Source of the DNA: Hydrolagus colliei
Lineage: Eukaryota
DNA length: 63,772 nt
Assembly (NCBI GenBank): GCA_035084275.1
Contig: CM068769.1
Location: 1,364,229 to 1,428,000 of the forward strand
Reading direction: 5' to 3'
Shown here: positions 1-40,019 of the stretch, one piece after another
How positions within the stretch are numbered: the first letter of the stretch is position 1
How the letters are laid out: each line of letters begins with the position of its first letter
Notes under the pieces: model-generated
Database searches by the model: none
What the model was told of the DNA's origin: nothing
The model's input: the letters and a program-made list of their open reading frames with translations, nothing else
Program-made: the position numbers and the translations under genes

Positions 1-436
1 AGCGACTGTGCGACTGAGCGAGTGCGTGTTTGTGTGCGTGAGTGACTGAGTGACTGAGTGCGTGACAGAGTGACAGAGTGACAGAGTGCGTGACTGCGTG
101 AGTGCGTGAGTGCGTAAATGAGTGTCTGAGTGAGTGAGTGACTGGGCGACTGAGCGACTGAGCGAGGGCGCATGTGAATGCGTGAGTGCGTGAGTGAGTG
201 AGTGAGTGAGTGACTGAGTGAGTGAGTGAGTGAGTGAGTGAACGACTGAGCGACAGAGCGACTGTGCGACTGAGCGAGTGCGTGTGTGAGTGCGTGAGTG
301 ACTGAGTGACTGAGTGACTGATTGCGTGACAGAGTGACTGAGTGCGTGACTGCCTGATTGCGTGAGTGCGTGACTGAGTGACTGAGTGACTGAGCGACTG
401 GGCGACTGAGCGACTGAGCGAGTGCGCGAGTGAGTG
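1..436. repeat. Compound (GAGT)n/(GAGTGACT)n-like microsatellite
   Basis: Tandem gagt/gact/gcgt units running into an N gap. Confidence 0.9.
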
Positions 437-1025
437 NNNNNNNNNNNNNNNNNNNNNNNNNNNNNNNNNNNNNNNNNNNNNNNNNNNNNNNNNNNNNNNN
501 NNNNNNNNNNNNNNNNNNNNNNNNNNNNNNNNNNNNNNNNNNNNNNNNNNNNNNNNNNNNNNNNNNNNNNNNNNNNNNNNNNNNNNNNNNNNNNNNNNNN
601 NNNNNNNNNNNNNNNNNNNNNNNNNNNNNNNNNNNNNNNNNNNNNNNNNNNNNNNNNNNNNNNNNNNNNNNNNNNNNNNNNNNNNNNNNNNNNNNNNNNN
701 NNNNNNNNNNNNNNNNNNNNNNNNNNNNNNNNNNNNNNNNNNNNNNNNNNNNNNNNNNNNNNNNNNNNNNNNNNNNNNNNNNNNNNNNNNNNNNNNNNNN
801 NNNNNNNNNNNNNNNNNNNNNNNNNNNNNNNNNNNNNNNNNNNNNNNNNNNNNNNNNNNNNNNNNNNNNNNNNNNNNNNNNNNNNNNNNNNNNNNNNNNN
901 NNNNNNNNNNNNNNNNNNNNNNNNNNNNNNNNNNNNNNNNNNNNNNNNNNNNNNNNNNNNNNNNNNNNNNNNNNNNNNNNNNNNNNNNNNNNNNNNNNNN
1001 NNNNNNNNNNNNNNNNNNNNNNNNN
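437..1025. other. Assembly gap
   Basis: N run. Confidence 1.
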
Positions 1026-1372
1026 GTGAGGGAGGCAGGGAGTGAGGGAGGGACGGAGGGACGGAGGGTGAGTGTAATGGAGGTATAGAGGGAGAGAGGG
1101 GAGACGGCGAGAAGGCGGGATGTAGGTAGAGTGGGAGTGGGAAGGATGGTGGAGGGAGGGAACGAGAGCTGGATGGAGGGATGGAGGGAGTGATGGAGGG
1201 AGGCAGTGAGAGAGGGAGGGAGGGTGGGAGGGAGGGAGGGATGTAGGGTGGGAGGAAGAGACGGAGTGAAGGAGAGAGGCAGGGATCGAGAGAGGGAGGG
1301 TTGGAGTGAGAGACGCAGGGATGAAGCGAGTGAGGGAGGTACGTAGGTAGTTAGGTAGAAAGGGAGGGATGG

Positions 1373-1647
1373 ANNNNNNNNNNNNNNNNNNNNNNNNNNN
1401 NNNNNNNNNNNNNNNNNNNNNNNNNNNNNNNNNNNNNNNNNNNNNNNNNNNNNNNNNNNNNNNNNNNNNNNNNNNNNNNNNNNNNNNNNNNNNNNNNNNN
1501 NNNNNNNNNNNNNNNNNNNNNNNNNNNNNNNNNNNNNNNNNNNNNNNNNNNNNNNNNNNNNNNNNNNNNNNNNNNNNNNNNNNNNNNNNNNNNNNNNNNN
1601 NNNNNNNNNNNNNNNNNNNNNNNNNNNNNNNNNNNNNNNNNNNNNNN
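1373..1647. other. Assembly gap within a purine-rich (GGGA)n-like low-complexity tract
   Basis: N run flanked by gagg/ggga repeats. Confidence 1.
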
Positions 1648-2315
1648 GAGGGAGGGAGGGAGCGAGTGTGGGAGGGAGAGAGGGAGTAAACATTAAAGGC
1701 AATGAGGGAGCGAGAGGGTAAGCCTGGCAGGGAGCGAGTGTGTGCTAGTGTCAGGTATGTTCTGCATTCGAGTGCCACGTAGGCAATCAGGGAAAATCAT
1801 TTTGGTTTGCACAATTGTTTGACGGAAAATATCCAAAAAATGCGAACTTCAAGTTTCCGATTCAATCTTATGGTGAAAATGCTTATTCGCTTAACGTTGT
1901 TTGCGCTTTTAAAGAAGCAATGAACTACGTTAAGCGGCGTCTGACTACATACTCCCAAACAAATTGACAGTAGATTTCTGTGAAAAACGCGGCTGCTAAT
2001 TACATGTAGTAGCATCCAACAACATATTGCTTTTCGCTTGTCCAATTTATTTGGGGAGGAATTTAGTTAAGTTTGTGGAGGAAGGAAATTTGCTTAAGGT
2101 ATCTTCCTGCCTGAAGTCGAGCCCAGGTCTCGCACGTAAGGCGAATGTTCTACGTGCTGAGCTACAAGGCTCCACAAGGAGAGATTGGTGAGTGGAAGGC
2201 GAGTTAGTGTGGAGCGAGTTGGGGCAATACCACTGAAGTCACAGTTGAAAATATAACTCTTGATCCAGGCATTGGAGTAGGAAAGGGGTCTTCTATGTTA
2301 CAATGTTGTCGAGTT

Positions 2316-2745
2316 TAAGACACTCGTCCTCACCTACACGGCCTTACACGGCCTTGCCCCATCCTACCTAACCGATCTACTCTCCCACTACACGCCCACC
2401 CGGACCCTCCGTTCAACAGGACTTGGCCTGCTCCAAGCCCCCCGCCCGAACCGCCCCACCATCGGAGGCCGGGCCTTCAGTTTCTCCGCTCCCACCTTAT
2501 GGAATGCCATCCATCAATCCCTCCGTTTCGCCTCTTCCGTTTCCTCTTTCAAGGCCGGTTTGAAGACTTTCCCCTTCGATCGTGCCTTTTGTTCCAACCC
2601 GAACCCTTTTACCTCCCCTTCGTGTTTCACCGCTTCTCAAACACGCCCCTCCCAGCGCAGGTCAAACGCATCTTGTTCAGCGCCTTGGGACGTCCTACCG
2701 ACGTGAAAGGCGCTCTATAAATGTAAATTGTTGTTGTTGTTGTCT
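2316..2745 (+). mobile_element. L2-like LINE 3' fragment
   Basis: Decayed FKTLVLTYTALHGLAPSYLTDLL...RTLRS motif, then the gggacgtcc...gacgtgaaaggcgctctataaatgtaa end and (ttg)n tail; recurs many times in the window. Confidence 0.75.
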
Positions 2746-3526
2746 GACAATCTAACTCAGCGATCTGCACATACGCTATCGACGTGGACATTCATTCCCT
2801 CTGTCAAAATCTCGATAATCGATTCGAATTGTTCAACTTTCTGTGCTCCAGCTGCTTAATGATAATCCCTCAAACAAAAATTGTCGTTTCAGTCCATAAC
2901 TATTTCTGTGACGCTACTGTGCGCAATTGGCTATCGTGTGTTGCCCATTAATGGTTGTTCAAGTCAAATAAATTGAAGATAGATTTTAGGGCGAATCGCG
3001 GCAGCCAATTGCGCACAACAGCCTCCCCAGCGACAGTCATGGATTGAAATGACTGATTTTTTATTGTGCGTTTGTTTGGAAGGATTACTACGAAGCTTTC
3101 TATGTGGCTGTGTGTGAATGTGTGTGTTTGTGTGTGCACATGTGTGTCTGTATGCGTGTGTTTGTGTAAGGAAATCAAGCAAGCAAATTTGACCAAGCGT
3201 TCACCTTACTGCCTGGAATCGAACATCGGAATCATGTTTGCAACGCGAGTGGTCTTAACACGGAGATACAGGAGTACGCAGTGGGAAAGATCTGTGCGAA
3301 GCTCATCAAGACTCTCGATTATGTGATACATCAAAAGCAAAGATGATTATTATTATTTTGATGACTTTCCCTCTTTCACTACACGAATGTACCCACCATT
3401 TTCTTCTGAGATATTGTCACGTGTATCCTTTGAGAGACGCAGCAGCAAAGTCAGTGATTGTCAACCAGGTCAATAGTCAGTGCTGACGTCTGTGCTGCGA
3501 TTAAACCATTTGTCTGCCATTGAGAG

Positions 3527-3564
3527 CTTTAATGTCAGTGTTATAGTCTGGCAGTAACACAGAG
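3527..3564 (-). pseudogene. Orphan decayed V RSS
   Basis: CTCTGTG-22-ACATTAAAG; spacer and downstream flank are homologous to those of the V at 16938-17244, with no V exon in front. Confidence 0.45.
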
Positions 3565-4609
3565 TATGTACGTATAATTGTAAAAAATCTTATTTATCAA
3601 ATGTATACAATGTAAAATTTATTGTTTTTAATTTAACTCTTTCCCCACATGAACCACTCTATCACTACTTCTGTTTGTGGTTGAAAATCAGTCACGAGTT
3701 TCCTCTGAGACACAGCGGCAGCTACAACAGATTGTCAAGCAGGTCAACAGTAATTCCAGGCATCTGTGCTGAGATTGATCCATTTCTCTCCTATTAGCAG
3801 ATTAATGTAAAGTGGGGCAGGCTGATAGCAGGCTGATTGTAACATGGCTTGTGTGATCGCATGGTAACAGTGGCTGTGTCAAATACAGCCACATTGACAG
3901 TCAATCACTTCAGTGGACCACCCGACGTGAGAGGCGCTCTGCACGTGTCATTGTGTTGTTGTTGATATTGGGTTCGATACCAAGGTCATTGCAACGCATT
4001 AGGCAGATATCCATACTCCACGGGCTTTACAACTCCATAATAATTTACAACATTCCCATTATGTACGAAATGTTCATAAGAGTGGATTCCACACACAGTG
4101 AGAAATGTGCTTGGAATCCACAAAGGGCCAAACCTTAGGCAAATTGCCTTCATCCACACGCCCAATAATAATCCGTCCCACACCAAAAAATCTATCACCA
4201 ATAATAAATTGGCCGTTTGCATCCACTACTGTGTTTGGGGACGTTGTTGTGCGCAATCGGCTGCCGGGTTTCTCTCTCCCATAAATACACAGTTAATTCA
4301 ATTCACAATGTATTTTGTGAAGCGCGTTGAGTCGCTGAGAGAAGACGTGAAAAACGATATAGCGAATGCAAGAATTATTAATATTAGTGCTGTTTTATCC
4401 ACATGTCTTAATTCTAACAAACATTTATCACAATCTTCTATCGGTTGATTAATCAACACATATAATACACAGCTATTGATGCATTTCTGTTTCTTTAGTT
4501 GACTTGATATGACGTCAATAAGGTGTAAGCTGTGGGGATAGTTAGCTGATAGTTTGTTACACGGTGTCTCACTGCTCTTTACTGTTTGCCAGCGTTTGGT
4601 TGTGATGAG

Positions 4610-4648
4610 GGTTATTGTACGAGGCTTCCTATGATGTATATCACTGTG
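4610..4648 (-). other. 23-RSS of supporting V-delta
   Basis: CACAGTG (4642-4648), 23 nt, ACAATAACC (4610-4618). Confidence 0.92.
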
Positions 4649-4941
4649 GTGCAGACTGACTGCACAGTGATACATAGCTGAGTCTGGCAGCTGTAGTCTG
4701 GCGATGGTTAACTGGCTGATGTTCTTGGCAGTGTCAAGAAAAGCTGAAATATGATCTCCAGTGGATTTTCCTCCCTCTCCAGTAGTGTTTCTGTGGATAA
4801 GGATTTTCGGTGCCTCGCCAGGGAACTGACGATACCAGGACACAACGAACTTCTGTCCACAGAATCCTAAGTATTGGCATTGTAGATCCACTCTCTCTCC
4901 AGCAACAGCCTTTGTTTCAGGCAGTGACTGATATATCGGTC
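4649..4941 (-). CDS. Leaderless NAR-TCR supporting TCR-delta V exon
   Basis: Acceptor tttcttccacgtag at 4942. Open frame (R)PIYQSLPETKAVAGERVDLQC-QYLGFCGQKFVVS-WYRQFPGEAPK...DSAMYHCAVSLH with Cys23, Trp41, Cys104 and an extra CDR1 Cys. No leader exon found; in phase with the J at 7215. Confidence 0.9.
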
Positions 4942-5579
4942 CTACGTGGAAGAAATCACAGGATAGTGAGCATTGCAATATGGTAGCGTTGTACAGCAAT
5001 TAAGGAGGATATTAGTAGAATTGTTTATTTGCCAGATGTTTCGGGCAACTGTCCAACCTATCCCACTCCCATTGTTGCCCTATATTCTTGACACATGTTA
5101 CTTCTGCATTACTCCACCTGTCCATTTCCACTTTAAAATTGATTGTTTATCATGCTTTAAAGCAGAATATCAGGCAGCGCGTTGAAGATTACAATAACTT
5201 TGGAATTTAAAACAAATTCTCTTTTTCTCCCTTTTGTTTCTTTTTTTGGGAAAAAATAATCCGCTTTTAACAGATAATATTTTAACAATCGTTGCGTTCA
5301 TGATAACATGATCTCTTTGTACATGACAATCGCCGCTACGCTGTAACCATTCTATTGAATCATCTTTCGACAATGTTCAAGAATTTAATATCCTTCTGAC
5401 CCTTTCAATAAAAGACACTTGAGAGCCGCATTTCACCTAAACCATACAGTTACTCTGTTAATAATACTTGCATTTGTTAAAGCACTTGTCATGTCTTCTC
5501 GTCGCCTAACAAACCTTCAAAATATATACTGTCAAGTGAATAGATTATATATGTGGACGAAACGTGGCATAATAATCCA

Positions 5580-5895
5580 ATTATTATCATTTTGATATAG
5601 CGCTTTTCACAACATATCGACGTCTTAAAGCGTTTCACAGAATATACTGTCAAGTGGATTGATTGTATATTTATGGGAGAAACACAGCAGCCAATTGCGC
5701 GTAGCAGCGTCCTACAAAAACTGTAGAGGATTGGAATGAAGAATGTTTATTATTGTAGGTTGCCTGCACGGATTATTATCAGGCATGTGGTTTTAGGTAA
5801 CTTCCCAAAGTTTCTCCCTAATCTTCCTGGATTCGAACACGGGTCTCACGCTTCATTGTGATTGCGATATCCACTGAGCTATAATCCACAATAAA
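5580..5895 (-). mobile_element. tRNA-derived SINE
   Basis: tagctcagtgg...ggttcgaatcc head, shared central body and L2-like tail. Confidence 0.7.
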
Positions 5896-6407
5896 ATAGC
5901 ATTTTTGAAGTCTTCCATGCATCTCAAATCACAGCGTGAAACACAATGTAAGTTGAGTTGACTTTATTTTTGATTAGACGTCATAGTGCGTTCCATGGTT
6001 TTCTTTGAGATGTCTCAAAAAGGCGAAAAGCAATACAGCAAATGGATATATTGTGATCAGTAGTATTATTATTGTCTCTGCCGAAAGAACAGTTTAGTTA
6101 TCATTTGTTTGCCTTATTCTGTATATGTTTTCTGTAGCAGATTGTCCACATTGAATCTTTGGTTGTCTGTGAACATGCGTATGTTTAGCAGAGAATCAGT
6201 TGTTAGTGTGTACAGTTAACCAAGTTGGTTTAAATTTGCGGCAAATGGAATTCCCCTCTGCAAATACTGTTACATTAAAGTCGCTGCTGGAGGAGGTGAA
6301 TGATGTCTCTGGCTTGTTTCCAACATGATTTATCTTTCCGTCTGTGAGCCACTCAAAGCTGTTTCACTTCTGTGACGAGAAAACAGCTTTCCTTATTCAT
6401 TTTTAAA

Positions 6408-6640
6408 NNNNNNNNNNNNNNNNNNNNNNNNNNNNNNNNNNNNNNNNNNNNNNNNNNNNNNNNNNNNNNNNNNNNNNNNNNNNNNNNNNNNNNNNNNNNN
6501 NNNNNNNNNNNNNNNNNNNNNNNNNNNNNNNNNNNNNNNNNNNNNNNNNNNNNNNNNNNNNNNNNNNNNNNNNNNNNNNNNNNNNNNNNNNNNNNNNNNN
6601 NNNNNNNNNNNNNNNNNNNNNNNNNNNNNNNNNNNNNNNN
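6408..6640. other. Assembly gap inside the NAR-TCR J to supporting-V intron
   Basis: N run. Confidence 1.
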
Positions 6641-7214
6641 ATGCTTCAATATCTACTTGCATGTTGATGTCCAAGAAAATAAGTTTCTGTGGGAAAACTC
6701 AACGTATATGGAGAGAGGAAAATTAGTGAACGTTTCAATTTATTGATCTATATTCAGACAAGGTGGGGTTTGAATGCAACTGTTTCTAGCACATTTCATA
6801 TTGGATCCAATTGATTTCCAAGAAAAGTTGGCTTGTCGAGACAAATTCGTGCAACAGGGATTGAAATACGCCATTGTAACTAACATATATAGCGCTAATT
6901 AGTTACCTAAACGTACACTCAACTTGTCCTCTCGTCAAATTGCTTTGGAAAATCTCTCCAGAAGAATTCAGCGACTTTAGAATATAATGAAATACACGTA
7001 GTTCAGCAAAGAAACCAGCCTCATATTGGGAGCTGTCCAATCTTTTGAAAATCGCAAACATATGTTTTAGTTTTCAAAAACTGATTGTTGAATTGACACA
7101 GTTTCAAAAAACTGGGAGCAATCTGTTAGAATATTGCACTTTAGAAATTCAACAAAATCAACAAATAAATGAATAGAGTTTTATTTTAATTTGATAGAAA
7201 TTATCCACACTTAC

Positions 7215-7270
7215 GTTTTATTACCGTGACTTTGGATCCTGATCCATCTAAGCTATATGGCTTATAATTA
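7215..7270 (-). CDS. NAR-TCR J segment
   Basis: Translates NYKPYSLDGSGSKVTVIK (G-x-G-[ST]-x-V-x-V motif, IgNAR-like DGxG) with phase-1 donor C|GTAAGT at 7214. Confidence 0.88.
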
Positions 7271-7309
7271 CACAGTCACACAGTTCTCGTAATACACGGT
7301 GCAAAAACT
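7271..7309 (-). other. 23-RSS of NAR-TCR J
   Basis: Plus strand reads CACAGTC (7271-7277), 23 nt, GCAAAAACT (7301-7309). Confidence 0.85.
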
Positions 7310-7620
7310 AGTGTATCTGATCATGATTGAATACTGCTACAAAAAAGATCTAAATGTTAGCAAGATGGTAATAGTTTCTACATCTCTACAACTGTCTCGT
7401 CACCCGACATTCATTTCGTCCAAATCTGGTTTAATTTATGTAGAATTTCTACCGAACACGAACAAATTCCCTCAACAAGAAAACATTTTTCGGTAAATAG
7501 TTAAAGAATTTTCTGCTTGAAATAACTAAATCAGTACGTAAACTGCCAAATTTAGCGTAATGAAAGAAGATACAGTACTTAGTGTTCATGTGCAATATAA
7601 TTCCATGTAAATAGCCGCAC

Positions 7621-7689
7621 GGTAGTTGTACTGATGGATTCCAATGTGTGTATCAAATCAACACAGTATTTGCTGTCAACACAATTACA
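7621..7689 (-). other. NAR-TCR D segment (7649-7661, TTGATTTGATACA) with 12/12 RSS
   Basis: Plus strand: GGTAGTTGT-12-CAATGTG | 13-nt D | CACAGTA-12-ACAATTACA. Lies exactly between the 22-RSS V and the 23-RSS J, satisfying the 12/23 rule. Nonamers are degenerate. Confidence 0.75.
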
Positions 7690-8015
7690 TTGTTTTGCAA
7701 AACAACTGTAACAGTGTCTGGTCATGTACAAATTACCAATCAATGATATCACGTGTACAATTATTTTGAAGATATTCCTATTCAGATATGATTTGTCGTC
7801 TAATATATATACGTAAATTGCGATATATGCCAATTGCACTCACATTCAACGTCCTTTAACACTACATAAATTTTCCTAAGTGTTCCCCAATAATGCTTGT
7901 TTGTCGAAGAGAATGTTACTAAACACCATTGCACATCACACAACAATGGATAATGTGCATTGAATTCATTGACAAAATCACATTGACTATGTGTTGTCTT
8001 TGAATTGATGAAGAG

Positions 8016-8053
8016 GCTTTTTGTATTGTTGGAAGCCTGGATGCAGCATTGTG
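8016..8053 (-). other. 22-bp-spacer RSS of NAR-TCR V
   Basis: CACAATG (8047-8053), 22 nt, ACAAAAAGC (8016-8024). Confidence 0.9.
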
Positions 8054-8342
8054 TCGTCCCACTGATATCGAGCTCTACATCTGTAGGTAGCGCTGTCGGC
8101 AAATTGCAAATCATTAATTTCCAGCAGAGATGTCTTTGTTCCCACTTTGATAACATCAAACCGACTTTCGCGAGGGATGGACATCCAAACTCCTCCATTT
8201 GGAAACTGCCTTTGAAATGCCAAGCTGATAGATCTGTAGCTCCCCGAATAACCTTCTGCAAAGACGCAGTTGATGGTCAGAGGATCGCATTCTTCTTTAG
8301 TAACAGAGTTTGGTGTCTGTGTTACGGTCTGACTGAAAACAT
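8054..8342 (-). CDS. NAR-TCR V exon (IgNAR-like V with short CDR2 region)
   Basis: Acceptor catgtttcag at 8343. Open frame HVFSQTVTQTPNSVTKEECDPLTINCVFAEGYSGSYRSISLAFQRQFPNGGVWMSIPRESRFDVIKVGTKTSLLEINDLQFADSATYRCRARYQWD. Short IgNAR-like spacing between FR2 and FR3 and an extra FR1 Cys. Confidence 0.88.
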
Positions 8343-8704
8343 CTGAAACATGTGAAACAGGACATCAGGTTAATACAGGCAAAACCCTGACCTGCACAAT
8401 CAGCAGCAAATCACGATGCTTGGCCTGAGTCGAATTGATTTCAATTTGGACAATAATGATATAATTATCATGGTGCATGAATAGAATATAAGCAGAACAG
8501 ATTAATCGATAGCAATCTGCTGCTGTGTTTCGCCCGCAAAAGAAAAAAAGAAAAACTACGGTCACAATATATTCTGTGAAGCGCTTCAATACGTTTCATC
8601 GACGTGAGAAGCCTCTGTTTCAAAGCGTGGAATTATGTAAATTATGATAAGGCAAAGTTGAACGATGGTATTCATTCGGGCCGAGTAATTGGAACAAAAC
8701 TCAC

Positions 8705-8747
8705 GTTGTAAGTAGTGGATGGCGATGGCGATAGAGATGAGAAGCAT
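8705..8747 (-). CDS. NAR-TCR leader exon
   Basis: ATG...MLLISIAIAIHYLQ with C|GTGAGT phase-1 donor; splices in frame to the V exon. Confidence 0.85.
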
Positions 8748-8837: not shown

Positions 8838-8872
8838 TTCACGTCAGGAGAATCACATTAGCGTGTGACGTG
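8838..8872 (-). promoter_or_regulatory. CRE-like elements upstream of the NAR-TCR leader
   Basis: TGACGTG in both orientations (8840-8846, 8866-8872), about 100 bp upstream of the ATG; CRE motifs are typical of TCR V promoters. Confidence 0.45.
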
Positions 8873-11312
8873 ATGTCTGGTGACAGCGGATTTGGGAGTT
8901 GGAGGAGGGCGTGGCGAAAAGCCATTTGAGGAAAGGGAGTGACGAACTGTGTACGTGAGCAGGGGGCAGAAGTGGGCTGGTTATGCGGTGACTGTTGAAA
9001 AAATGGGCAATCGGCGAGGGCTGTGAGAGGAACGTAAATGATGACACTTCAAGTCGGAAACCGAGGGCGTGATGTAGAGAAGGACTCTGTTGTGAGTTGG
9101 TAAAGACAAATTATCAACGACAGCAAAACAAAATTGATTGATCGAGCGCCTTTCAGTTCGAAAGCAAGGTGCTGTACAGCGATGTCGGGACCAGAGAATT
9201 AGGGCACAGTATCATGGTAGGGTTTAGGGGAAGAGGAGTAGGAAAGAGGGTGTGTGAGGAGGTGGAGATGGAGAGAGTTGGGATTAGATGGGTGGAAATT
9301 AGGGAAGGAGAGAGTTGGGATGGGAGGGAGAGATTCGTGTGCCTTATGAGAGAGTTGGTGGGGGAGGGGGAGAGATTTTGGAGGGGAGGGAAAATGTTGG
9401 CAGCGGAGGGAGACATTTGGGAAAAAGAGACATTTGGAAATGTGGCGAGATTTTGGAGGACGCGAGAGATGGAAGGGGAGGGAGAAAGTTGGGAGGGGAA
9501 GCAGAGTGTTGTGAGGGATCTGAGAGAGGTGGCAGAGGAGAGCGAGAGAGTTGGAAAGGGATTTAAAGAGTTGGAAGAGGAGAGTTGGAGAGTTGCGAAG
9601 GTGGTGCGAGAGATATGGAAGTCAGAGGGAAAGATTTGGGAGGTGAGAGAGCAGGGATGGGAGGGAATTGGGAGGGGAGGCAGAGGATTGTAGAGAATGT
9701 AGAGAGTTGAGCATGGAGCAAGAGCGTTGGGTACGGAGATGACGATATTTGAGAGGGGAGCGAGAGTGTTATGAAGGAAGGGTGGAGAGTTGGGAGGGCA
9801 GATGATGGGTGAGGAGGTCAAACTAGAAACTAGGGTAAAGGCATTGTGTGTGGGTACAGAGGCTGGAGTATGTGGTAGAGAGAGTAACGGAGGGTTGCAA
9901 TGTGACACAGTGGGAGAAGATTTGGCAGCCAAGGGATCAGTTGAACCGTTTCAAAACTTCTCAGCTGCTGTACCAAGTTAGAGCGTCTGCAGCATTAATA
10001 TTTATGTTATATCTCGGCCAGTCCATCTCTCTGCCTAAGTCTCTGTCATTGAAGTTGAGGCCTGTTGTGAAGAAAATTATTTACCGATTTACAAAGCTGT
10101 GATTAGGAACCCGCGTATTTGTCGTTTGTCCAATGGCTTTGGACGGTAAAAATTGCCTTCAAAATAATGTTAATAATTGTGTGGTCGCTCATTCCACGAT
10201 TGAGTGTTGGATTTCACTGTTCATAATAGTCTGCAAACTCTGTCCACCAAACATACAACAACAACAACAACAGCTTGTATTTATGTAGCGTCCTCCACTC
10301 CGGACGGCTTCTCATTGCGCTTCAGATAAATGGTACAATCCAAGGACAGCGGGAGAAATGTGACCGAATGTGAAGCATTCAATACTCTTGAATCCTGTTA
10401 AGCGCTAGGAGCCCTCTCGATCACGTAATCAGGTGATTTATTCAATGTCAGCATTATCAACGTCCAATTGTCTATTCTGACAGAAAATAATCCAGTTTCC
10501 AGCTGACATTTGTATTAAGTATGAAGATGGTTTATGGAATGTGAGGCGGAGATGATCCATAGTGGACATAAACGTTTGAGATTATTTTTGATTCCATGAT
10601 GGAGAGTGAGGAGAATGCAGTTTGGGGCTTTGTGTTTGAAAGTGGTGACACTGCAGATCATTCTGGAGTTAATTTATTGCTGATAATCATATTAGTCATT
10701 GCAGTTCACATAGTGATTGATCACGTACTCGAGCCTCCTCCAAGTGCTTCACGGAATGCGCGGTAGAACGGAGTGACTTTGTGTTTTGGGGGTCAAACAT
10801 TATGCAGTTACGCACTGCAGCATCTCATGGACAGCAGTGTATTTAATGATAAAGTTCTTGTATATTATATATTTATTATATTTTTGGAGTAAATTATTAT
10901 TTTATTTATTTCCATTGACGTATCTATTTCTTTTTGTTAACGTCTTACTTAATTATTCAGAATTGTTTCTGTTATTTGGGTTCACTTACACTTACTATTT
11001 ATTATTTTATGTATTGTTACACGTATGTCATTCATTATGTTATGGTCTATTAGACAATGACTCGGTTTATCTATTTGTTTAAGGGATTATTGGCTGATTT
11101 ATTTTACTTTTCCAAGGATAATATCCAGTGGAACATGACTCGCCAATCGACTAACAACCGAGTTCCTATTTACTGTTTAGTAAAGAGAGGGATGTGTATA
11201 CTGAAACTGTCTCTAGGTTTCGTCCAGCCTGGGAATCGAACGCAGGATCTCTCGCTTGTGAGATAGAACCTCTCGCAATAAAATTGGAGGATTCCACATG
11301 ATTTGTTATATG

Positions 11313-16898: not shown

Positions 16899-17386
16899 GG
16901 TTTATGTACGGTGGTGTAGCCTGACAGTAACAATGTGTGAGTGATGCCACAATAGTATGTGGCTGCATCAGATAGAGCCACAGCCAGCACAGTTACAGCG
17001 GATGTCTTGCTGCTCGTGTCCAAACTAGTGGTGAAACGACCTTCAACAAATTCAGCTCTGAAATAGTCCCCATCATGATCATGTCTCAGTGTGTACAGAG
17101 GAGGCTGGCCTGGATACTGACGGTACCAGTACATGTAGACATTCGTGTAACGAGCAGAGTAGGTCCTACTCAAGGTCACAGTCTGGCCTTCAGTGACAGA
17201 AACTTCCATCTGCTTTGGTTTAAGTTTATCTCCATTCGCTGTCGCTGTAGCCAGAGAGAACACGTTATTCACTGTAACGCACACATCAGAGATAAATCTC
17301 CAAGTGGTCTTCAGAACGAGAGTAAATTGCTTACATAATAGGACCAATAACATTAAAATGTTCACAGCTGTGTGTTTACTCTCCAT
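16899..17386 (-). pseudogene. TCR V segment with open frame but Cys23 to Arg
   Basis: Leader 17335-17386 (MESKHTAVNILMLLVLL, T|GTAAGC). V exon 16938-17244 reads TLSRTY (CGT), WYRQYPGQPP, DAATYYCGIT. RSS CACATTG-23-ACATAAACC. Confidence 0.85.
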
Positions 17387-21016: not shown

Positions 21017-21757
21017 GGTTTTTGTACGGCAGGAACACTGAACTGTGCCTCCGTGGGGCTCAGCGCACAGTAATACACAACAGAGTCTGTCATTGTCACT
21101 TGGGATATATTCAATGGCACGGTTCTTCGCGTTTTATCCAAATTCGTTGAGAAATGTTTTCGTGCAAATTCTGCATGATTCCCCTTGTTGTTCCTTGTGT
21201 ATACGTAAAGGATATAATCTGGAGCTTTGTTGGTATAGTGACGGTACCAGAATATATATGGATCGCCGCCGCTTGTGGCTGTATAATTACACAGCAGATA
21301 GGCATATTTTCCTACATTCACTGGCACAGTAGATTGGAGCTGAGTCACAGAGTCTCCCCACTAAGCCCTGGAAACCAGAAACACATCATCATTCAATACA
21401 ACAGCAACAATTCCAATCGTCCTCTTGAGTTTCATACGGCACCTCATTAAATCGATGGTACGTCTCCAAACAATTCACAGAATAAAATTAGCGAATGTAG
21501 GTTGTGTAATGTTTCACCCTGTCCTGTCAGGGAATCCTCTCGGATTTTGAGATACAGCATGATCCTCTCGGCTGTGAAGCCAGTGTTACAAACTCTGAAA
21601 TAATGGACACTCCAACTCGTCAATCTCTTTCTGTATTATTATGCACTTTTTTCGATAAAACATTGGCGTTGGATAATACTTTCGGATAAAAACTACAAAT
21701 AGAATGCTTACCTAACAAGGCAGCGATGGCTACTGCGAGATGGATATACATTTTCAT
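21017..21757 (-). pseudogene. TCR V family A segment, 1-nt frameshift at the exon start
   Basis: Leader 21712-21757 (MKMYIHLAVAIAALL, G|GTAAGC). V exon 21056-21367 is otherwise intact (LLCNY...IFWYRH...DSVVYYCALSP), but GGGGAGAC replaces paralogous GGAGGAGAC, giving TGA in the spliced frame. RSS CACGGAG-23-ACAAAAACC. Confidence 0.85.
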
Positions 21758-26293: not shown

Positions 26294-26635
26294 AGTTTTT
26301 GTATGGAGCCGCCATAGCCTAGCAGCAGTGTGGGTTCCTTGGCAGAGTAATACACGGCACTGTCGCTGACCAGGGCGCTGCCAATGCTCAGTTCAAAAAC
26401 TTGGCTCGTTTTATCGACGTTGGAGGAAAATCTAGCTGGGAATTCAGTGCTCCTGTGATCCTTCACTTCGGTAGGGCGAAGAATATAGACGGCAGCGTTG
26501 CTGGAAGACTGTCTGTACCAGCAGAGATAGCAGTTGTCACTGATTGTCTTTAAGGTGCAGGATAACTTCACATCCTCTCCTTCTTCAACCGATCTCTCAG
26601 AAATCGATTGTTTTCCGGTGTCTTGTTACTGTTAC
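26294..26635 (-). pseudogene. TCR V pseudogene
   Basis: Acceptor at 26636; frameshift near the exon start; VKLSC...CWYRQ...DSAVYYSAKEP (Cys104 to Ser); RSS CACACTG-23-ACAAAAACT. Confidence 0.85.
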
Positions 26636-31949: not shown

Positions 31950-32282
31950 GGTTTTTGTACGGGTGTCTCGGGGATGCCTTCGCTGTGGGCCTCAGTGCAC
32001 AAACATAGGCAGCGGTGTCGCTGAGCTGGAGGTTGTCGATCTTGAGCTGGAAATGTTTCTTAGAGGAATCCATCAGGGCAGAGAAGCGTTCCTGACTGAT
32101 ATGCTTCCCGTAGGAATGCCTTCGGATGAGGAAAGCGGGCCCTTCACTGCGGCGCAGGCTGTACAGCAGCACTGATATGCTGTCGGTAGTCGTGGAGACA
32201 TTAGAGCTGATAGTCAGTGAGGCGCCTTCGAAACGCCAGGCTGCTTTCGGGCTCTGCCTCACCGAATCTCCATCGCTGATTC
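31950..32282 (-). pseudogene. TCR V segment, open frame but Cys23 to Ser and Trp41 to Leu
   Basis: GISDGDSVRQSP...LTISSN...VLLYS...DTAAYVCALRP; RSS CACAGCG-22-ACAAAAACC; leader not confidently found. Confidence 0.8.
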
Positions 32283-35934: not shown

Positions 35935-36413
35935 TGTTTTTGTACAGGTCCTTCGTAAACACACATTACTGTGCTCTCCGCACGGAAGTAAGTGGCGGAG
36001 TCAGACACTCGCAATTCTCGAATCGATAAGGTGCTGTTTTTTCCAACAGTCAAAGCATTTATCCTCTGCTTCTCCTTCATTTCTCTCGATCCCAACAACA
36101 ATTAAGTGATGGAGCCGTTTCCATGCTGTTTGTACCATTGAAACCTTGGGCTGGACACTGTGGTGCTTCACACCATAATTACATTCCCATTTTCATTCTC
36201 TGTCAGAGCCTGGGGTCGCTGTGACACTTCGCTTTCAGCCAAGACACCTGGGGACATAGAACATTCTTGGATATTATTTCATAAAATGTCTGCAATAAAA
36301 ATTTTAATTATGTACCAGGAAAACCAGGATGTGTCCAATCTGATACTCTACTTACACAAGATTGTTGCGATTAAATAAAAAATAATATATGGTGCATTAA
36401 AATCCTGCTTCAT
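35935..36413 (-). pseudogene. TCR V family B pseudogene
   Basis: Leader 36356-36413 intact (MKQDFNAPYIIFYLIATIL). V exon 35974-36247 has Cys23 to TGA, an internal TAA, and Cys104 to Arg. RSS CACAGTA-23-ACAAAAACA. Confidence 0.88.
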
Positions 36414-39138: not shown

Positions 39139-40019
39139 AGTTTTTGTAGGGCGGAAGCACTGATCTGTGTCTCTGTGGGGCTCAGTGCACAGTAATACAC
39201 CGCCGAGTCAGTAACTCTCACTTGGGTTATATTTAACGGGACAATTCTTCCCACTTTATTCACTATCGTTGAGAATCGATTGTTGGTAAAGTCGGCATAT
39301 TGTGGTCTGTTGCGAGTGGACGTCCAACGGATATATTCTGGAGCTGTGTTTGGATAATGGCGGTACAAGAACAGATAGGGAGCGCTACTTGTACTTGTAT
39401 AATTACACCTCAGATACACATCCTCCACTTCCTTCATTGTCACAGTAGATTGGAGCTGTGTCACAGAGTCTCCTCCACAATGTCCTGGAAAACAGACTCA
39501 TATCAGCGTTCAGTAGAATAACAACAATTACAATAGTAATGTAGGCATATGACAAAACTACATATTGCGTCTTCGCGATGACTAAACGTCTACTATACTG
39601 AATATAGTGGAATGTATAGTATCTGTTTAATTTGCGGTCGTAACGTAGTAGACATTTTTACACAAAAGTTTTCCACAAACAGTCGTGGATTGAGCGTCTG
39701 TATTATCATTAGCAGTATTACTTACTGACAGATAATTACCCCCCAATGAAGGAACTGGCCAATGGGCCATGTTCAAAATTACTTCTCAGTTTTCACAGCA
39801 ATGAGTGATGAGTGACTAAACTTGCCCAATGTTTCGTCCTGTCCCGGCTGTGAAGAACCCAGATATTCTCGATTGTGACAACTCTATAAGGCTTGTTGTG
39901 TATTCTTTATGTTATGCCATCAACAACGAGCTGGATCATAAGTGCAGTTGGCTGACTATAGAATTAATTAATATCTTACCTGAGAAGGCAATGATGGCTG
40001 CTGCCACATATATATAAAT
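39139..40019 (-). pseudogene. TCR V family A segment, start codon lost and Trp41 to Leu
   Basis: Leader 39980-40019 begins ATT where the paralog has ATG, with an upstream in-frame TAA. V exon 39178-39484 is open (YLRCNY...YLFLYRH...DSAVYYCALSP). RSS CACAGAG-23-ACAAAAACT. Confidence 0.85.

What the first reader, a model, noticed from the sequence alone, without database searches (positions are those of the whole stretch)
4610..8747. Complete, apparently functional NAR-TCR (double-V TCR-delta) cassette
Seen: leader, V(22-RSS), D(12/12), J(23-RSS), intron and leaderless V(23-RSS), with all splice phases in register. The J donor C plus the acceptor GA CCG ATA gives KVTVIK-R-PIYQ. Established: cartilaginous fish make TCR-delta chains with an IgNAR-like V on top of a leaderless supporting V-delta, requiring two separate V(D)J reactions. 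This is a known system rather than a new one, but standard annotation would miss it, and it is the intact core among mostly dead V genes.
Basis: partly seen in the sequence, partly recalled or inferred. Interest (0 to 1): 0.7.

Follow-up and report, generated by a model that had tools for sequence, protein, structure and literature searches.

The report
Germline NAR-TcR double-V cassette, chimaera-type

Summary
On the minus strand lie a 43-nt leader exon, an IgNAR-type V exon with a 22-nt-spacer RSS, one D flanked by two 12-RSS, a J with a 23-RSS and a phase-1 splice donor, a 2.27-kb intron, and a leaderless TCR-delta-type V exon with a 23-RSS. All reading frames are open and both splice phases match.

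The N gap (6408-6640) lies wholly inside the J-to-supporting-V intron, so frame is not an issue. Continuity across it is supported only indirectly.

The distal V matches about 30 solved IgNAR V domains ahead of any TCR or Ig V. In a tree it sits in the NAR clade (99/96). The supporting V sits in the NAR-TcR supporting-V clade (100/99), next to Callorhinchus milii sequences.

All four published sequence hallmarks are present: leader, a-b loop Cys, Phe in place of Trp41, and a CDR1 Cys in a leaderless V-delta. Six elasmobranch germline cassettes fetched here have the same layout.

Verdict: a recombination-competent-looking NAR-TcR cassette from a holocephalan. It is a new member of a known kind. 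Expression, linkage to D/J/C-delta and the interdomain disulfide remain untested. A side result is that the V-D and D-J spacer lengths are nearly fixed across all seven cassettes.

The parts
8705..8747 (-). Leader exon of the NAR-type V: ATG at 8747, 14 codons plus 1 nt, donor GTGAGT, phase 1.
   Evidence: best hydrophobic mini-exon in phase. It is the same 43-nt, phase-1 leader exon as in the five elasmobranch cassettes where it was measured and is homologous to the C. milii leaders MSLLGVSISFLFLQ.
8343..8704 (-). Leader intron, 362 nt, GT...AG.
8054..8342 (-). NAR-type (IgNAR-like) V exon, 289 nt, open frame. It has Cys23/Cys104, an a-b loop Cys (KEEC) and Phe in place of Trp41.
8016..8053 (-). 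V RSS: heptamer CACAATG, 22-nt spacer, nonamer ACAAAAAGC.
   Evidence: A 22-nt spacer is also found in all six elasmobranch NAR-TcR V segments examined.
7662..7689 (-). D 5' RSS: nonamer TGTAATTGT, 12-nt spacer, heptamer TACTGTG.
   Evidence: (0 of 2000 shuffles).
7649..7661 (-). D coding segment TTGATTTGATACA (13 nt). Only one of its three frames is free of stop codons (DLI).
7621..7648 (-). D 3' RSS: heptamer CACATTG, 12-nt spacer, nonamer ACAACTACC.
7271..7309 (-). J RSS: nonamer AGTTTTTGC, 23-nt spacer, heptamer GACTGTG.
7215..7270 (-). J coding segment (56 nt; NYKPYSLDGSGSKVTVIK plus 1 nt), donor GTAAGT, phase 1. It carries the DGSG motif typical of NAR and NAR-TcR J segments.
4942..7214 (-). 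Intron between the J and the supporting V, 2273 nt as written. It contains the assembly gap 6408-6640 (233 N) and a tRNA-like SINE fragment at about 5825-5890.
4649..4941 (-). Leaderless supporting V-delta exon, 293 nt, acceptor ACGTAG, phase 1. It has Cys23, Trp41, Cys104 and an extra CDR1 Cys (YLGFCGQ).
4610..4648 (-). Supporting V RSS: heptamer CACAGTG, 23-nt spacer, nonamer ACAATAACC.
   Evidence: The Mustelus cassette has the identical nonamer.

Best explanation
This is one germline NAR-TcR unit of a TCR alpha/delta V array in a holocephalan (chimaera-type) genome.

Inferred mechanism, from the established NAR-TcR model:
1. In a developing gamma-delta-lineage thymocyte, RAG joins the NAR-type V (22/23-RSS) to the single D (12-RSS) and the D (12-RSS) to the J (23-RSS). 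This deletes spacers of 392 and 378 nt. The 12/23 rule forbids a direct V-J join, so the D is always included.
2. Independently, the leaderless supporting V (23-RSS) joins D-delta and J-delta segments lying beyond coordinate 1.
3. Transcription starts upstream of the only leader (8747).
4. Splicing joins the leader to the NAR VDJ exon, the J donor to the supporting V(D)J exon (both phase 1), and that exon to C-delta.
5. The product is a three-domain delta chain. The NAR V sits unpaired on top as a single-domain binding site. It is probably tied to the supporting V by a disulfide between its a-b loop Cys and the supporting V's CDR1 Cys.

Shown here: all sequence elements, their integrity and phases, the family relationships of both V domains, and identity of layout with shark, skate and ray cassettes.

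Inferred: the rearrangement itself, transcription, splicing, the disulfide, and pairing with TCR-gamma.
For: - Anatomy and phases.
- D element beyond chance: 0 of 2000 shuffles.
- Distal V: about 30 IgNAR V chains (E 4e-10 to 1e-5) precede any TCR or Ig V in the PDB search. An exhaustive HMMER search of 1.84 billion representatives returns C. milii and elasmobranch two-V models and IgNAR heavy chains.
- Maximum-likelihood tree: the NAR clade is split from TCR V at 99/96. The supporting V falls in the supporting-V clade at 100/99 and groups with C. milii at 100/99.
- Hallmarks named in PMC1845163 are all present. They are nearly invariant in 57 homologues: Cys33, Phe57 and Cys156 of the conceptual product.
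- Cys-Cys span is 63 residues, like NAR-type V (61-65) and unlike TCR V (71-74).
- Six elasmobranch germline cassettes share the layout: a 43-nt phase-1 leader exon (measured in five of them; the script failed on L006), a 22-nt V spacer, one 12/12 D, a 22-23-nt-spacer J RSS (23 nt in five, 22 nt in L002) with a DG-G motif, and a supporting V with a 23-RSS. A phase-1 J donor and a leaderless acceptor were checked directly in L001.
- In Mustelus the gene model continues to C-delta about 17 kb downstream.
- C. milii has NAR-TCR but no IgNAR (PMC3964593).
Against: - There is no expression or rearrangement evidence for this cassette.
- D/J/C-delta are not in the window.
- The J-to-supporting-V join crosses an assembly gap whose continuity is unverified.
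- The D is open in only one of three frames, and its 5' nonamer is weak (4 mismatches over heptamer plus nonamer).
- The J heptamer is GACTGTG rather than CACTGTG, although the coding-proximal GTG is kept.
- Pfam V-set scores the distal V below its gathering threshold (22.4 versus 26 bits).
- A hydrophobic mini-ORF with a weak donor lies 588 nt upstream of the supporting V (5590-5530). A cryptic leader therefore cannot be strictly excluded.
Confidence: 0.87

Rival explanations
1. It is a genuine NAR-TcR cassette, but silent or rarely used (a cryptic pseudogene). It looks intact, yet a weak D or J signal, a D that is stop-prone in two frames, or a lesion hidden in the gap keeps it out of the expressed repertoire.
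For: The D is open in only one of three frames, whereas the D in L001 is open in all three. The D 5' RSS has 4 mismatches and the J heptamer starts with G. Most neighbouring V segments are damaged. No protein from this cassette is in the public collection. One C. milii paralogue (P0001) has lost the CDR1 Cys, so decay does occur in the family.
Against: All exons are open and all four splice sites are canonical. The coding-proximal three bases of every heptamer are intact. All structurally conserved residues are kept, and most departures from the elasmobranch consensus are shared with other chimaera sequences. The spacer lengths still fit the family constraint.
Confidence: 0.1
2. It is an assembly chimera. 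The L-V-D-J half and the supporting-V half come from two different places or cassettes and were placed side by side by scaffolding across the 6408-6640 gap.
For: The gap sits exactly between the two halves. Its length is only estimated. Nothing in the window bridges it. The family is multi-copy in related genomes.
Against: Order, orientation and splice phase are exactly as in six independent cassettes. The resulting intron length is within their range. The window holds only one NAR V, one NAR J and one supporting V. Even a mis-join between paralogous cassettes would leave the interpretation of each half unchanged.
Confidence: 0.03
3. It is the V region of an IgNAR heavy-chain cluster, that is, an antibody gene and not a T-cell receptor gene.
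For: The best solved-structure matches are IgNAR V domains.
Against: There is one D, not three. The J is followed by a leaderless TCR-type V with its own RSS, not by IgNAR C exons. The a-b loop has Cys where IgNAR has Gly, and Phe where IgNAR has Trp41. In the tree the window's V lies outside the IgNAR clade, which has 100/99 support. The nearest relatives are from C. milii, which lacks IgNAR.
Confidence: 0.01

Closest known systems
Elephant shark (Callorhinchus milii) NAR-TcR genes (Venkatesh et al. 2007, PMC1845163; 2014, PMC3964593)
   Same: These are the nearest sequences found. The supporting V is 68-70% identical to C. milii models. The distal V is 44-52% identical. The leader is homologous. 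The J ends in KVTVxK and is followed by R. Even the translated supporting-V RSS is nearly the same (HHSDIHHRKPRTITLITTK here, HHSDTHHRKPRTITLITTK in P0001). All published hallmarks are shared.
   Different: No C. milii protein in the collection is identical or close to this cassette's products. It is either an unannotated divergent paralogue in C. milii or comes from another chimaera. The species was not resolved.
Elasmobranch NAR-TcR (first described in nurse shark, Criscitiello et al. 2006, cited); germline cassettes L001-L006 examined here
   Same: The element order, RSS spacer classes (22 / 12-12 / 23 / 23, with a 22-nt J spacer in L002), single D and DG-G J motif are identical in all six. 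The 43-nt phase-1 leader exon was seen in the five measured. The phase-1 J donor and leaderless acceptor were checked in L001. The a-b loop Cys, Phe for Trp41 and CDR1 Cys are shared. V-to-D spacing is 381-392 nt and D-to-J spacing 376-381 nt.
   Different: Protein identity is only about 35-44%. The leader intron is 362 nt here against about 150 nt. The window has a single supporting-V RSS, whereas several elasmobranch cassettes carry tandem arrays of it. The window's V branches outside the elasmobranch NAR-TcR plus IgNAR group.
IgNAR V domains (VNAR), for example PDB 1sq2
   Same: The short single-domain V fold type is shared. They are the best structural-database matches (E about 4e-10). The Cys-Cys span is similarly short, and the J has the DGxG motif.
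   Different: IgNAR has Trp41, Gly in the a-b loop, three D segments and its own C exons. It is secreted or B-cell bound, and is absent from chimaeras.
TCR-mu of marsupials and monotremes
   Same: It is a three-domain TCR chain with an N-terminal antibody-like V on a supporting V. The working model, an unpaired single-domain binder, is analogous (PMC3457774).
   Different: It is convergent, not homologous. The V is VH-derived, the locus is separate, and in marsupials the supporting V is germline-joined.

Membership tests
NAR-TcR (doubly rearranging TCR-delta) | The membrane-distal V is related to IgNAR V and not to TRAV/TRDV. | tested here: met
   About 30 VNAR chains rank first in the PDB phmmer search. 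The NAR clade is separated from TCR V at 99/96. The Cys-Cys span is 63 residues, against 71-74 for TCR V.
NAR-TcR (doubly rearranging TCR-delta) | The distal V has its own typical leader peptide. | tested here: met
   A 43-nt phase-1 leader exon encodes MLLISIAIAIHYLQ. The exon has the same length and phase in the five elasmobranch cassettes measured. The feature is named in PMC1845163.
NAR-TcR (doubly rearranging TCR-delta) | A Cys in the a-b loop of the distal V. | tested here: met
   KEEC-DP in the window. The column is Cys in 98% of 57 homologues and Gly in IgNAR.
NAR-TcR (doubly rearranging TCR-delta) | The distal V lacks the canonical Trp of WYRK. | tested here: met
   The window has AFQRQ. 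The column is Phe in 98% of homologues and Trp in IgNAR.
NAR-TcR (doubly rearranging TCR-delta) | The distal V has its own D and J with compatible RSS, so it can undergo a V(D)J reaction separate from that of the supporting V. | tested here: met
   V 22-RSS, D 12/12, J 23-RSS. The D pair was matched by 0 of 2000 shuffles. Six elasmobranch cassettes have the same set.
NAR-TcR (doubly rearranging TCR-delta) | The J carries a splice donor in phase with a downstream leaderless TCR-delta V exon. | tested here: met
   Donor GTAAGT and acceptor ACGTAG are both phase 1, and the read-through is KVTVIK-R-PIYQ. L001 has the same phase. No homologous leader was found upstream; only one weak cryptic mini-ORF was found.
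NAR-TcR (doubly rearranging TCR-delta) | The supporting V belongs to the dedicated supporting-V lineage and has a Cys in CDR1. | tested here: met
   Supporting-V clade at 100/99. The window has YLGFCGQ. The column is Cys in 96% of homologues and is absent from the conventional V segments of the window.
NAR-TcR (doubly rearranging TCR-delta) | The supporting V has a 23-RSS for joining to D-delta. | tested here: met
   CACAGTG / 23 / ACAATAACC, one mismatch to consensus.
NAR-TcR (doubly rearranging TCR-delta) | The cassette lies in the TCR-delta locus, upstream of D-delta, J-delta and C-delta. | tested here: inconclusive
   The window is a one-strand array of TRA/TRD-type V segments. It holds no C-delta and no D-delta-like RSS in 1-4609, and two gaps lie there. 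In Mustelus (L002) D-like 12-RSS and C-delta follow the cassette within 18 kb.
NAR-TcR (doubly rearranging TCR-delta) | It is expressed as a three-domain delta chain after two rearrangements. | not testable with these tools
   No transcript or thymocyte DNA data are available for the source species. A full-length homologous model exists in Mustelus (P0010, 385 aa).
NAR-TcR (doubly rearranging TCR-delta) | An interdomain disulfide links the a-b loop Cys to the CDR1 Cys. | not testable with these tools
   Both cysteines are present.
IgNAR heavy-chain cluster | V, three D segments and J, followed by IgNAR constant exons. | tested here: not met
   There is a single D. The J splices to a leaderless TCR-type V that has its own RSS.
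IgNAR heavy-chain cluster | Canonical Trp41, and no Cys in the a-b loop. | tested here: not met
   The window has Phe and Cys respectively.

The most novel reading that the evidence does not exclude
Beyond being one more NAR-TcR cassette, this chimaera copy shows that the geometry of the unit, and not its spacer sequence, has been held fixed since holocephalans and elasmobranchs split.

- In all seven cassettes the V RSS spacer is 22 nt.
- The V-to-D interval is 381-392 nt and the D-to-J interval 376-381 nt.
- The spacer sequences of the window are not alignable above shuffles to the elasmobranch ones.
- The two introns of the same units vary about 2.4- to 2.7-fold.

This would mean that RAG-mediated joining within such miniloci needs a precise RSS-to-RSS distance, for example a fixed nucleosome or synapsis geometry. 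An approximately 400-bp spacing in shark IgH miniloci is already known. The precision and evolutionary depth would be the new part.
Probability: 0.4. Interest if true: 0.45.

Novelty: new member of a known kind. Interest (0 to 1): 0.3.

Why it matters
NAR-TcR is central to the question of whether the single-domain antigen-binding V began in a T-cell receptor or in an antibody. Chimaeras have NAR-TcR but no IgNAR, so chimaera cassettes are the key outgroup (PMC3964593).

A fully delimited germline unit is directly useful for three things:
- annotating TRA/TRD loci that automatic pipelines currently mislabel;
- designing primers for repertoire work;
- recombination-substrate experiments.

It does not change what is known about how the system works.

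Tried and rejected
- Word-indexed protein search with the conceptual 226-aa product found nothing. The index needs shared exact 5-mers. A profile of distant hits (A3) then found 114 proteins.
- Exact look-ups of the C. milii models P0001 and P0007 and of the IgNAR chain P0035 found no contigs. I could therefore not compare a chimaera paralogue or an IgNAR cluster at the DNA level.
I did not try another route.
- ARAGORN and Rfam found nothing in the intron's tRNA-like stretch.
- Searches for C-delta, J-delta and D-delta signals in the window were negative.
- BLAST of the gap flanks against the rest of the window found no bridging repeat.
- Promoter comparison with L001 and L002 showed no shared motif. 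The two CRE-like octamers upstream of the leader are not conserved in sharks.
- The original NAR-TcR paper (PMC1458790) and the 2021 review (PMC7909615) are not held. The hallmarks were taken from PMC1845163 instead.
- Rejected readings: an IgNAR cluster, an ordinary TRAV/TRDV pair, and a chance arrangement. See the rivals.


Full report
**1. What is in the sequence**

Everything lies on the minus strand.

| Element | Coordinates | Details |
|---|---|---|
| Leader exon | 8747-8705 | 43 nt, MLLISIAIAIHYLQ plus 1 nt, donor GTGAGT |
| Leader intron | 8704-8343 | 362 nt, ends TTTCAG |
| Distal V exon | 8342-8054 | 289 nt, open frame |
| V RSS | 8053-8016 | CACAATG / 22 nt / ACAAAAAGC |
| D 5' RSS | 7689-7662 | TGTAATTGT / 12 / TACTGTG |
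| D coding | 7661-7649 | TTGATTTGATACA, 392 nt after the V coding end |
| D 3' RSS | 7648-7621 | CACATTG / 12 / ACAACTACC |
| J RSS | 7309-7271 | AGTTTTTGC / 23 / GACTGTG |
| J coding | 7270-7215 | starts 378 nt after the D end; NYKPYSLDGSGSKVTVIK plus 1 nt, donor GTAAGT |
| J-to-supporting-V intron | 7214-4942 | ends ACGTAG |
| Supporting V exon | 4941-4649 | 293 nt, no leader of its own |
| Supporting V RSS | 4648-4610 | CACAGTG / 23 / ACAATAACC |

- The distal V translates as (H)VFSQTVTQTPNSVTKEECDPLTINCVFAEGYSGSYRSISLAFQRQFPNGGVWMSIPRESRFDVIKVGTKTSLLEINDLQFADSATYRCRARYQWD.
- Both splices are phase 1.
- The supporting V keeps Cys23, Trp41 (SWYRQ) and Cys104 (YHC).

**2. The gap (tested first, as asked)**

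- The 233 N at 6408-6640 lie inside the J-to-supporting-V intron, 574 nt from the donor and 1466 nt from the acceptor.
- No exon, V-like hit or real ORF touches the gap. Frame across it therefore does not matter.
- Continuity cannot be shown from the window, because the flanks match nothing else in it.
- Indirect support: the order, orientation and phase are right. The intron length as written (2273 nt) falls inside the roughly 1.4-3.8 kb range of six elasmobranch cassettes.
- I did not look up the missing letters anywhere.

**3. More than chance**

- No dinucleotide shuffle of the 706-nt V-J interval (0 of 2000) produced a D-like pair of 12-RSS as good as the real one.
- The supporting V scores 52 bits on Pfam V-set. 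The distal V scores only 22 bits, below the gathering threshold of 26.
- In the PDB sequence search, however, about 30 IgNAR V domains (E from 4e-10 to 1e-5) come before any TCR or Ig V.

**4. Context**

- The window is a one-strand array of about a dozen V segments with 22-23-nt-spacer RSS.
- It holds only one NAR-type V, one NAR-type J and one supporting V.
- Of the ten conventional V segments, about three or four look intact: the ones whose heptamers start at 21055, 14753 and 23880, and possibly 39177.
- The others lack a canonical Cys or Trp, or carry stops.
- There is no C-delta and no D-delta-like signal between the supporting V and coordinate 1. Two gaps lie in that stretch.

**5. Relatives**

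- The word-indexed search with the conceptual product found nothing.
- An exhaustive HMMER scan of 1.84 billion cluster representatives with the distal V exon gave 43 hits. By name the best ones are:
  - Callorhinchus milii models: P0001 (XP_007909367) and P0012. P0007 looks chimaera-type but carries no species name.
  - Elasmobranch two-V models: P0010 from Mustelus asterias (385 aa, running into C-delta) and P0016 from Hemiscyllium ocellatum.
- By length and sequence, P0035 (678 aa) looks like an IgNAR heavy chain.
- A profile search (A3) then found about 75 two-V models of around 230 aa from about 20 shark, skate and ray species.
- Nearly all are labelled 'uncharacterized', 'T cell receptor alpha chain MC.7.G5-like', 'immunoglobulin kappa light chain-like', 'lachesin-like' and the like.
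- The supporting V alone finds a single protein, a C. milii Ig-like domain protein at 70% identity.
- So this cassette's own products are not in the collection. The nearest relatives are from the elephant shark.

**6. Family placement**

In a maximum-likelihood tree:
- NAR-type V domains are split from TCR V domains at 99/96.
- The window's distal V sits in an unresolved group with the chimaera NAR-TcR V domains.
- That group lies outside the elasmobranch NAR-TcR V clade (96/95) and the IgNAR V clade (100/99).
- The window's supporting V is inside the supporting-V clade (100/99). It groups with the two C. milii supporting V domains (100/99, 68% identity).

The hallmarks listed for nurse shark and elephant shark NAR-TcR in PMC1845163 are all present:
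- a leader on the distal V;
- a Cys in its a-b loop (KEEC);
- loss of the canonical Trp (Phe here);
- no leader on the supporting V;
- a Cys in its CDR1 (YLGFCGQ).

In an alignment with 57 homologues these three residues are conserved in 96-98% of sequences. IgNAR has Gly and Trp at the two distal-V positions.

Most of the window's departures from the elasmobranch consensus are shared with the chimaera sequences. This points to a holocephalan origin.

The Cys-Cys span of the distal V is 63 residues. NAR-type V domains span 61-65 and TCR V domains 71-74.

**7. Germline comparison**

I fetched six elasmobranch cassettes:

| Locus | Species |
|---|---|
| L001 | Hemiscyllium ocellatum |
| L002 | Mustelus asterias |
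| L003 | Amblyraja radiata |
| L004 | Pristis pectinata |
| L005 | Scyliorhinus canicula |
| L006 | Carcharodon carcharias |

What they share with the window:
- a 22-nt V spacer, a single D with 12/12 RSS, a J motif DG-G-(V)TV and a supporting V with a 23-RSS, in all six;
- a J RSS spacer of 23 nt in five and 22 nt in L002;
- a 43-nt phase-1 leader exon in the five measured (the script failed on L006);
- a phase-1 J donor and a leaderless acceptor, checked directly in L001.

In Mustelus, D-like 12-RSS and the C-delta exons follow within 18 kb.

**8. Mechanism**

The 12/23 rule allows V (22/23) to D (12) and D (12) to J (23), but not V to J. The D is therefore obligatory.

The supporting V (23) must find a 12-RSS on a D-delta further downstream. 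Two independent V(D)J reactions are thus needed.

A single promoter and leader then yield leader-NAR VDJ-supporting VDJ-C-delta by splicing. This is the published NAR-TcR model.

For this locus, the rearrangement, the expression and the Cys-Cys bridge are inference.

**9. Weak points**

- The D is open in one frame only.
- Its 5' nonamer is poor.
- The J heptamer begins with G.
- A cryptic hydrophobic mini-ORF with a weak donor lies 588 nt upstream of the supporting V.
- The gap is unbridged.
- The species is unresolved.

**10. Side results**

(a) Spacer lengths. V-to-D (381-392 nt) and D-to-J (376-381 nt) distances are almost fixed in all seven cassettes.
- The window's spacer sequences are not alignable to the elasmobranch ones above shuffles (z up to 2.1).
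- The introns of the same units vary: the leader intron is 362 nt here against 147-154 nt, and the J-to-supporting-V intron is about 1.4-3.8 kb.
- A spacing of about 400 bp with non-conserved spacers is already described for shark IgH miniloci (PMC2435157).

(b) Tandem RSS arrays. In several elasmobranch cassettes the supporting V's RSS is repeated in tandem with a 61-62-nt period.
- There are 10.9 copies in the catshark and 3.4 in the white shark.
- The window has one good RSS and, 61 nt further on, a possible decayed copy.

**11. Verdict**

This is a known system, long reported in chimaeras as well as sharks, so it is a new member of a known kind.

Its value is as a clean, fully delimited germline unit from the lineage that has NAR-TcR but no IgNAR.

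Noticed in passing
window 4610-8053 compared with L001-L006: In the window and all six elasmobranch cassettes the NAR V RSS spacer is 22 nt, the V-to-D distance is 381-392 nt and the D-to-J distance is 376-381 nt. The window's spacer sequences are not alignable above shuffles. The introns of the same units vary about 2.4- to 2.7-fold. An approximately 400-bp spacing is known for shark IgH miniloci.
   Followed up: partly
L005 6837-7500; L006 6043-6254; L001 7080-7300; L004 9647-9770; window about 4549-4587: After the supporting V, several elasmobranch cassettes carry a tandem array of 61-62-nt units. Each unit holds a complete 23-RSS. The catshark has 10.9 copies at 94% identity and the white shark 3.4. 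The window has one good RSS plus a possible decayed second unit 61 nt downstream: its match to the white-shark unit was equalled by 1 of 500 shuffles, and its match to the catshark unit by 15 of 500. I found no description of this in the paper library.
   Followed up: partly
window 12987-39497, minus strand: Ten conventional TRA/TRD-type V segments with 22-23-nt-spacer RSS have heptamers starting at 39177, 35973, 33869, 31987, 26332, 23880, 21055, 16937, 14753 and 12987. The ones at 21055, 14753 and 23880 look intact. The one at 39177 has Leu for Trp41. The one at 16937 has Arg for Cys23. The one at 26332 has Ser for Cys104. The one at 31987 lacks both Cys23 and Trp41. The ones at 35973, 33869 and 12987 are truncated or carry stops.
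   Followed up: partly
homologues: About 75 two-V NAR-TcR-type gene models from about 20 elasmobranch species carry unrelated automatic names, such as 'Down syndrome cell adhesion molecule-like', 'lachesin-like', 'immunoglobulin gamma-1 heavy chain-like', 'TCR alpha chain MC.7.G5-like' or 'uncharacterized'. At least one model (P0016, checked against L001) reads through the V RSS heptamer before splicing into the J.
   Followed up: partly
window about 5825-5890, minus strand (inside the J-to-supporting-V intron): A tRNA-like stretch (..GGATTATAGCTCAGTGGATATCGC...GTTCGAATCC..) looks like the head of a tRNA-derived SINE. ARAGORN and Rfam report nothing.
   Followed up: partly
window 8839-8873, minus strand: Two CRE-like octamers, TCACGTCA at -126 and TGACGTGA at -99 from the leader ATG, sit in inverted orientation. 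They are not conserved upstream of the L001 and L002 leaders.
   Followed up: partly
window 5530-5590, minus strand: A hydrophobic mini-ORF, MIIIGLLCHVSSTYIIYSLD, with a weak phase-1 GT donor lies 588 nt upstream of the supporting V. It is probably a chance feature of AT-rich DNA, but it is the only conceivable cryptic leader.
   Followed up: no
window 39-436, 1028-1339, 1648-1687, 9230-9700: Microsatellites flank the two other assembly gaps: (TGAGTGAC)n and (GAGG)n. A CT-rich low-complexity block of about 470 nt lies about 500 nt upstream of the NAR V leader. These explain the GC-skew spikes in the composition profile.
   Followed up: no
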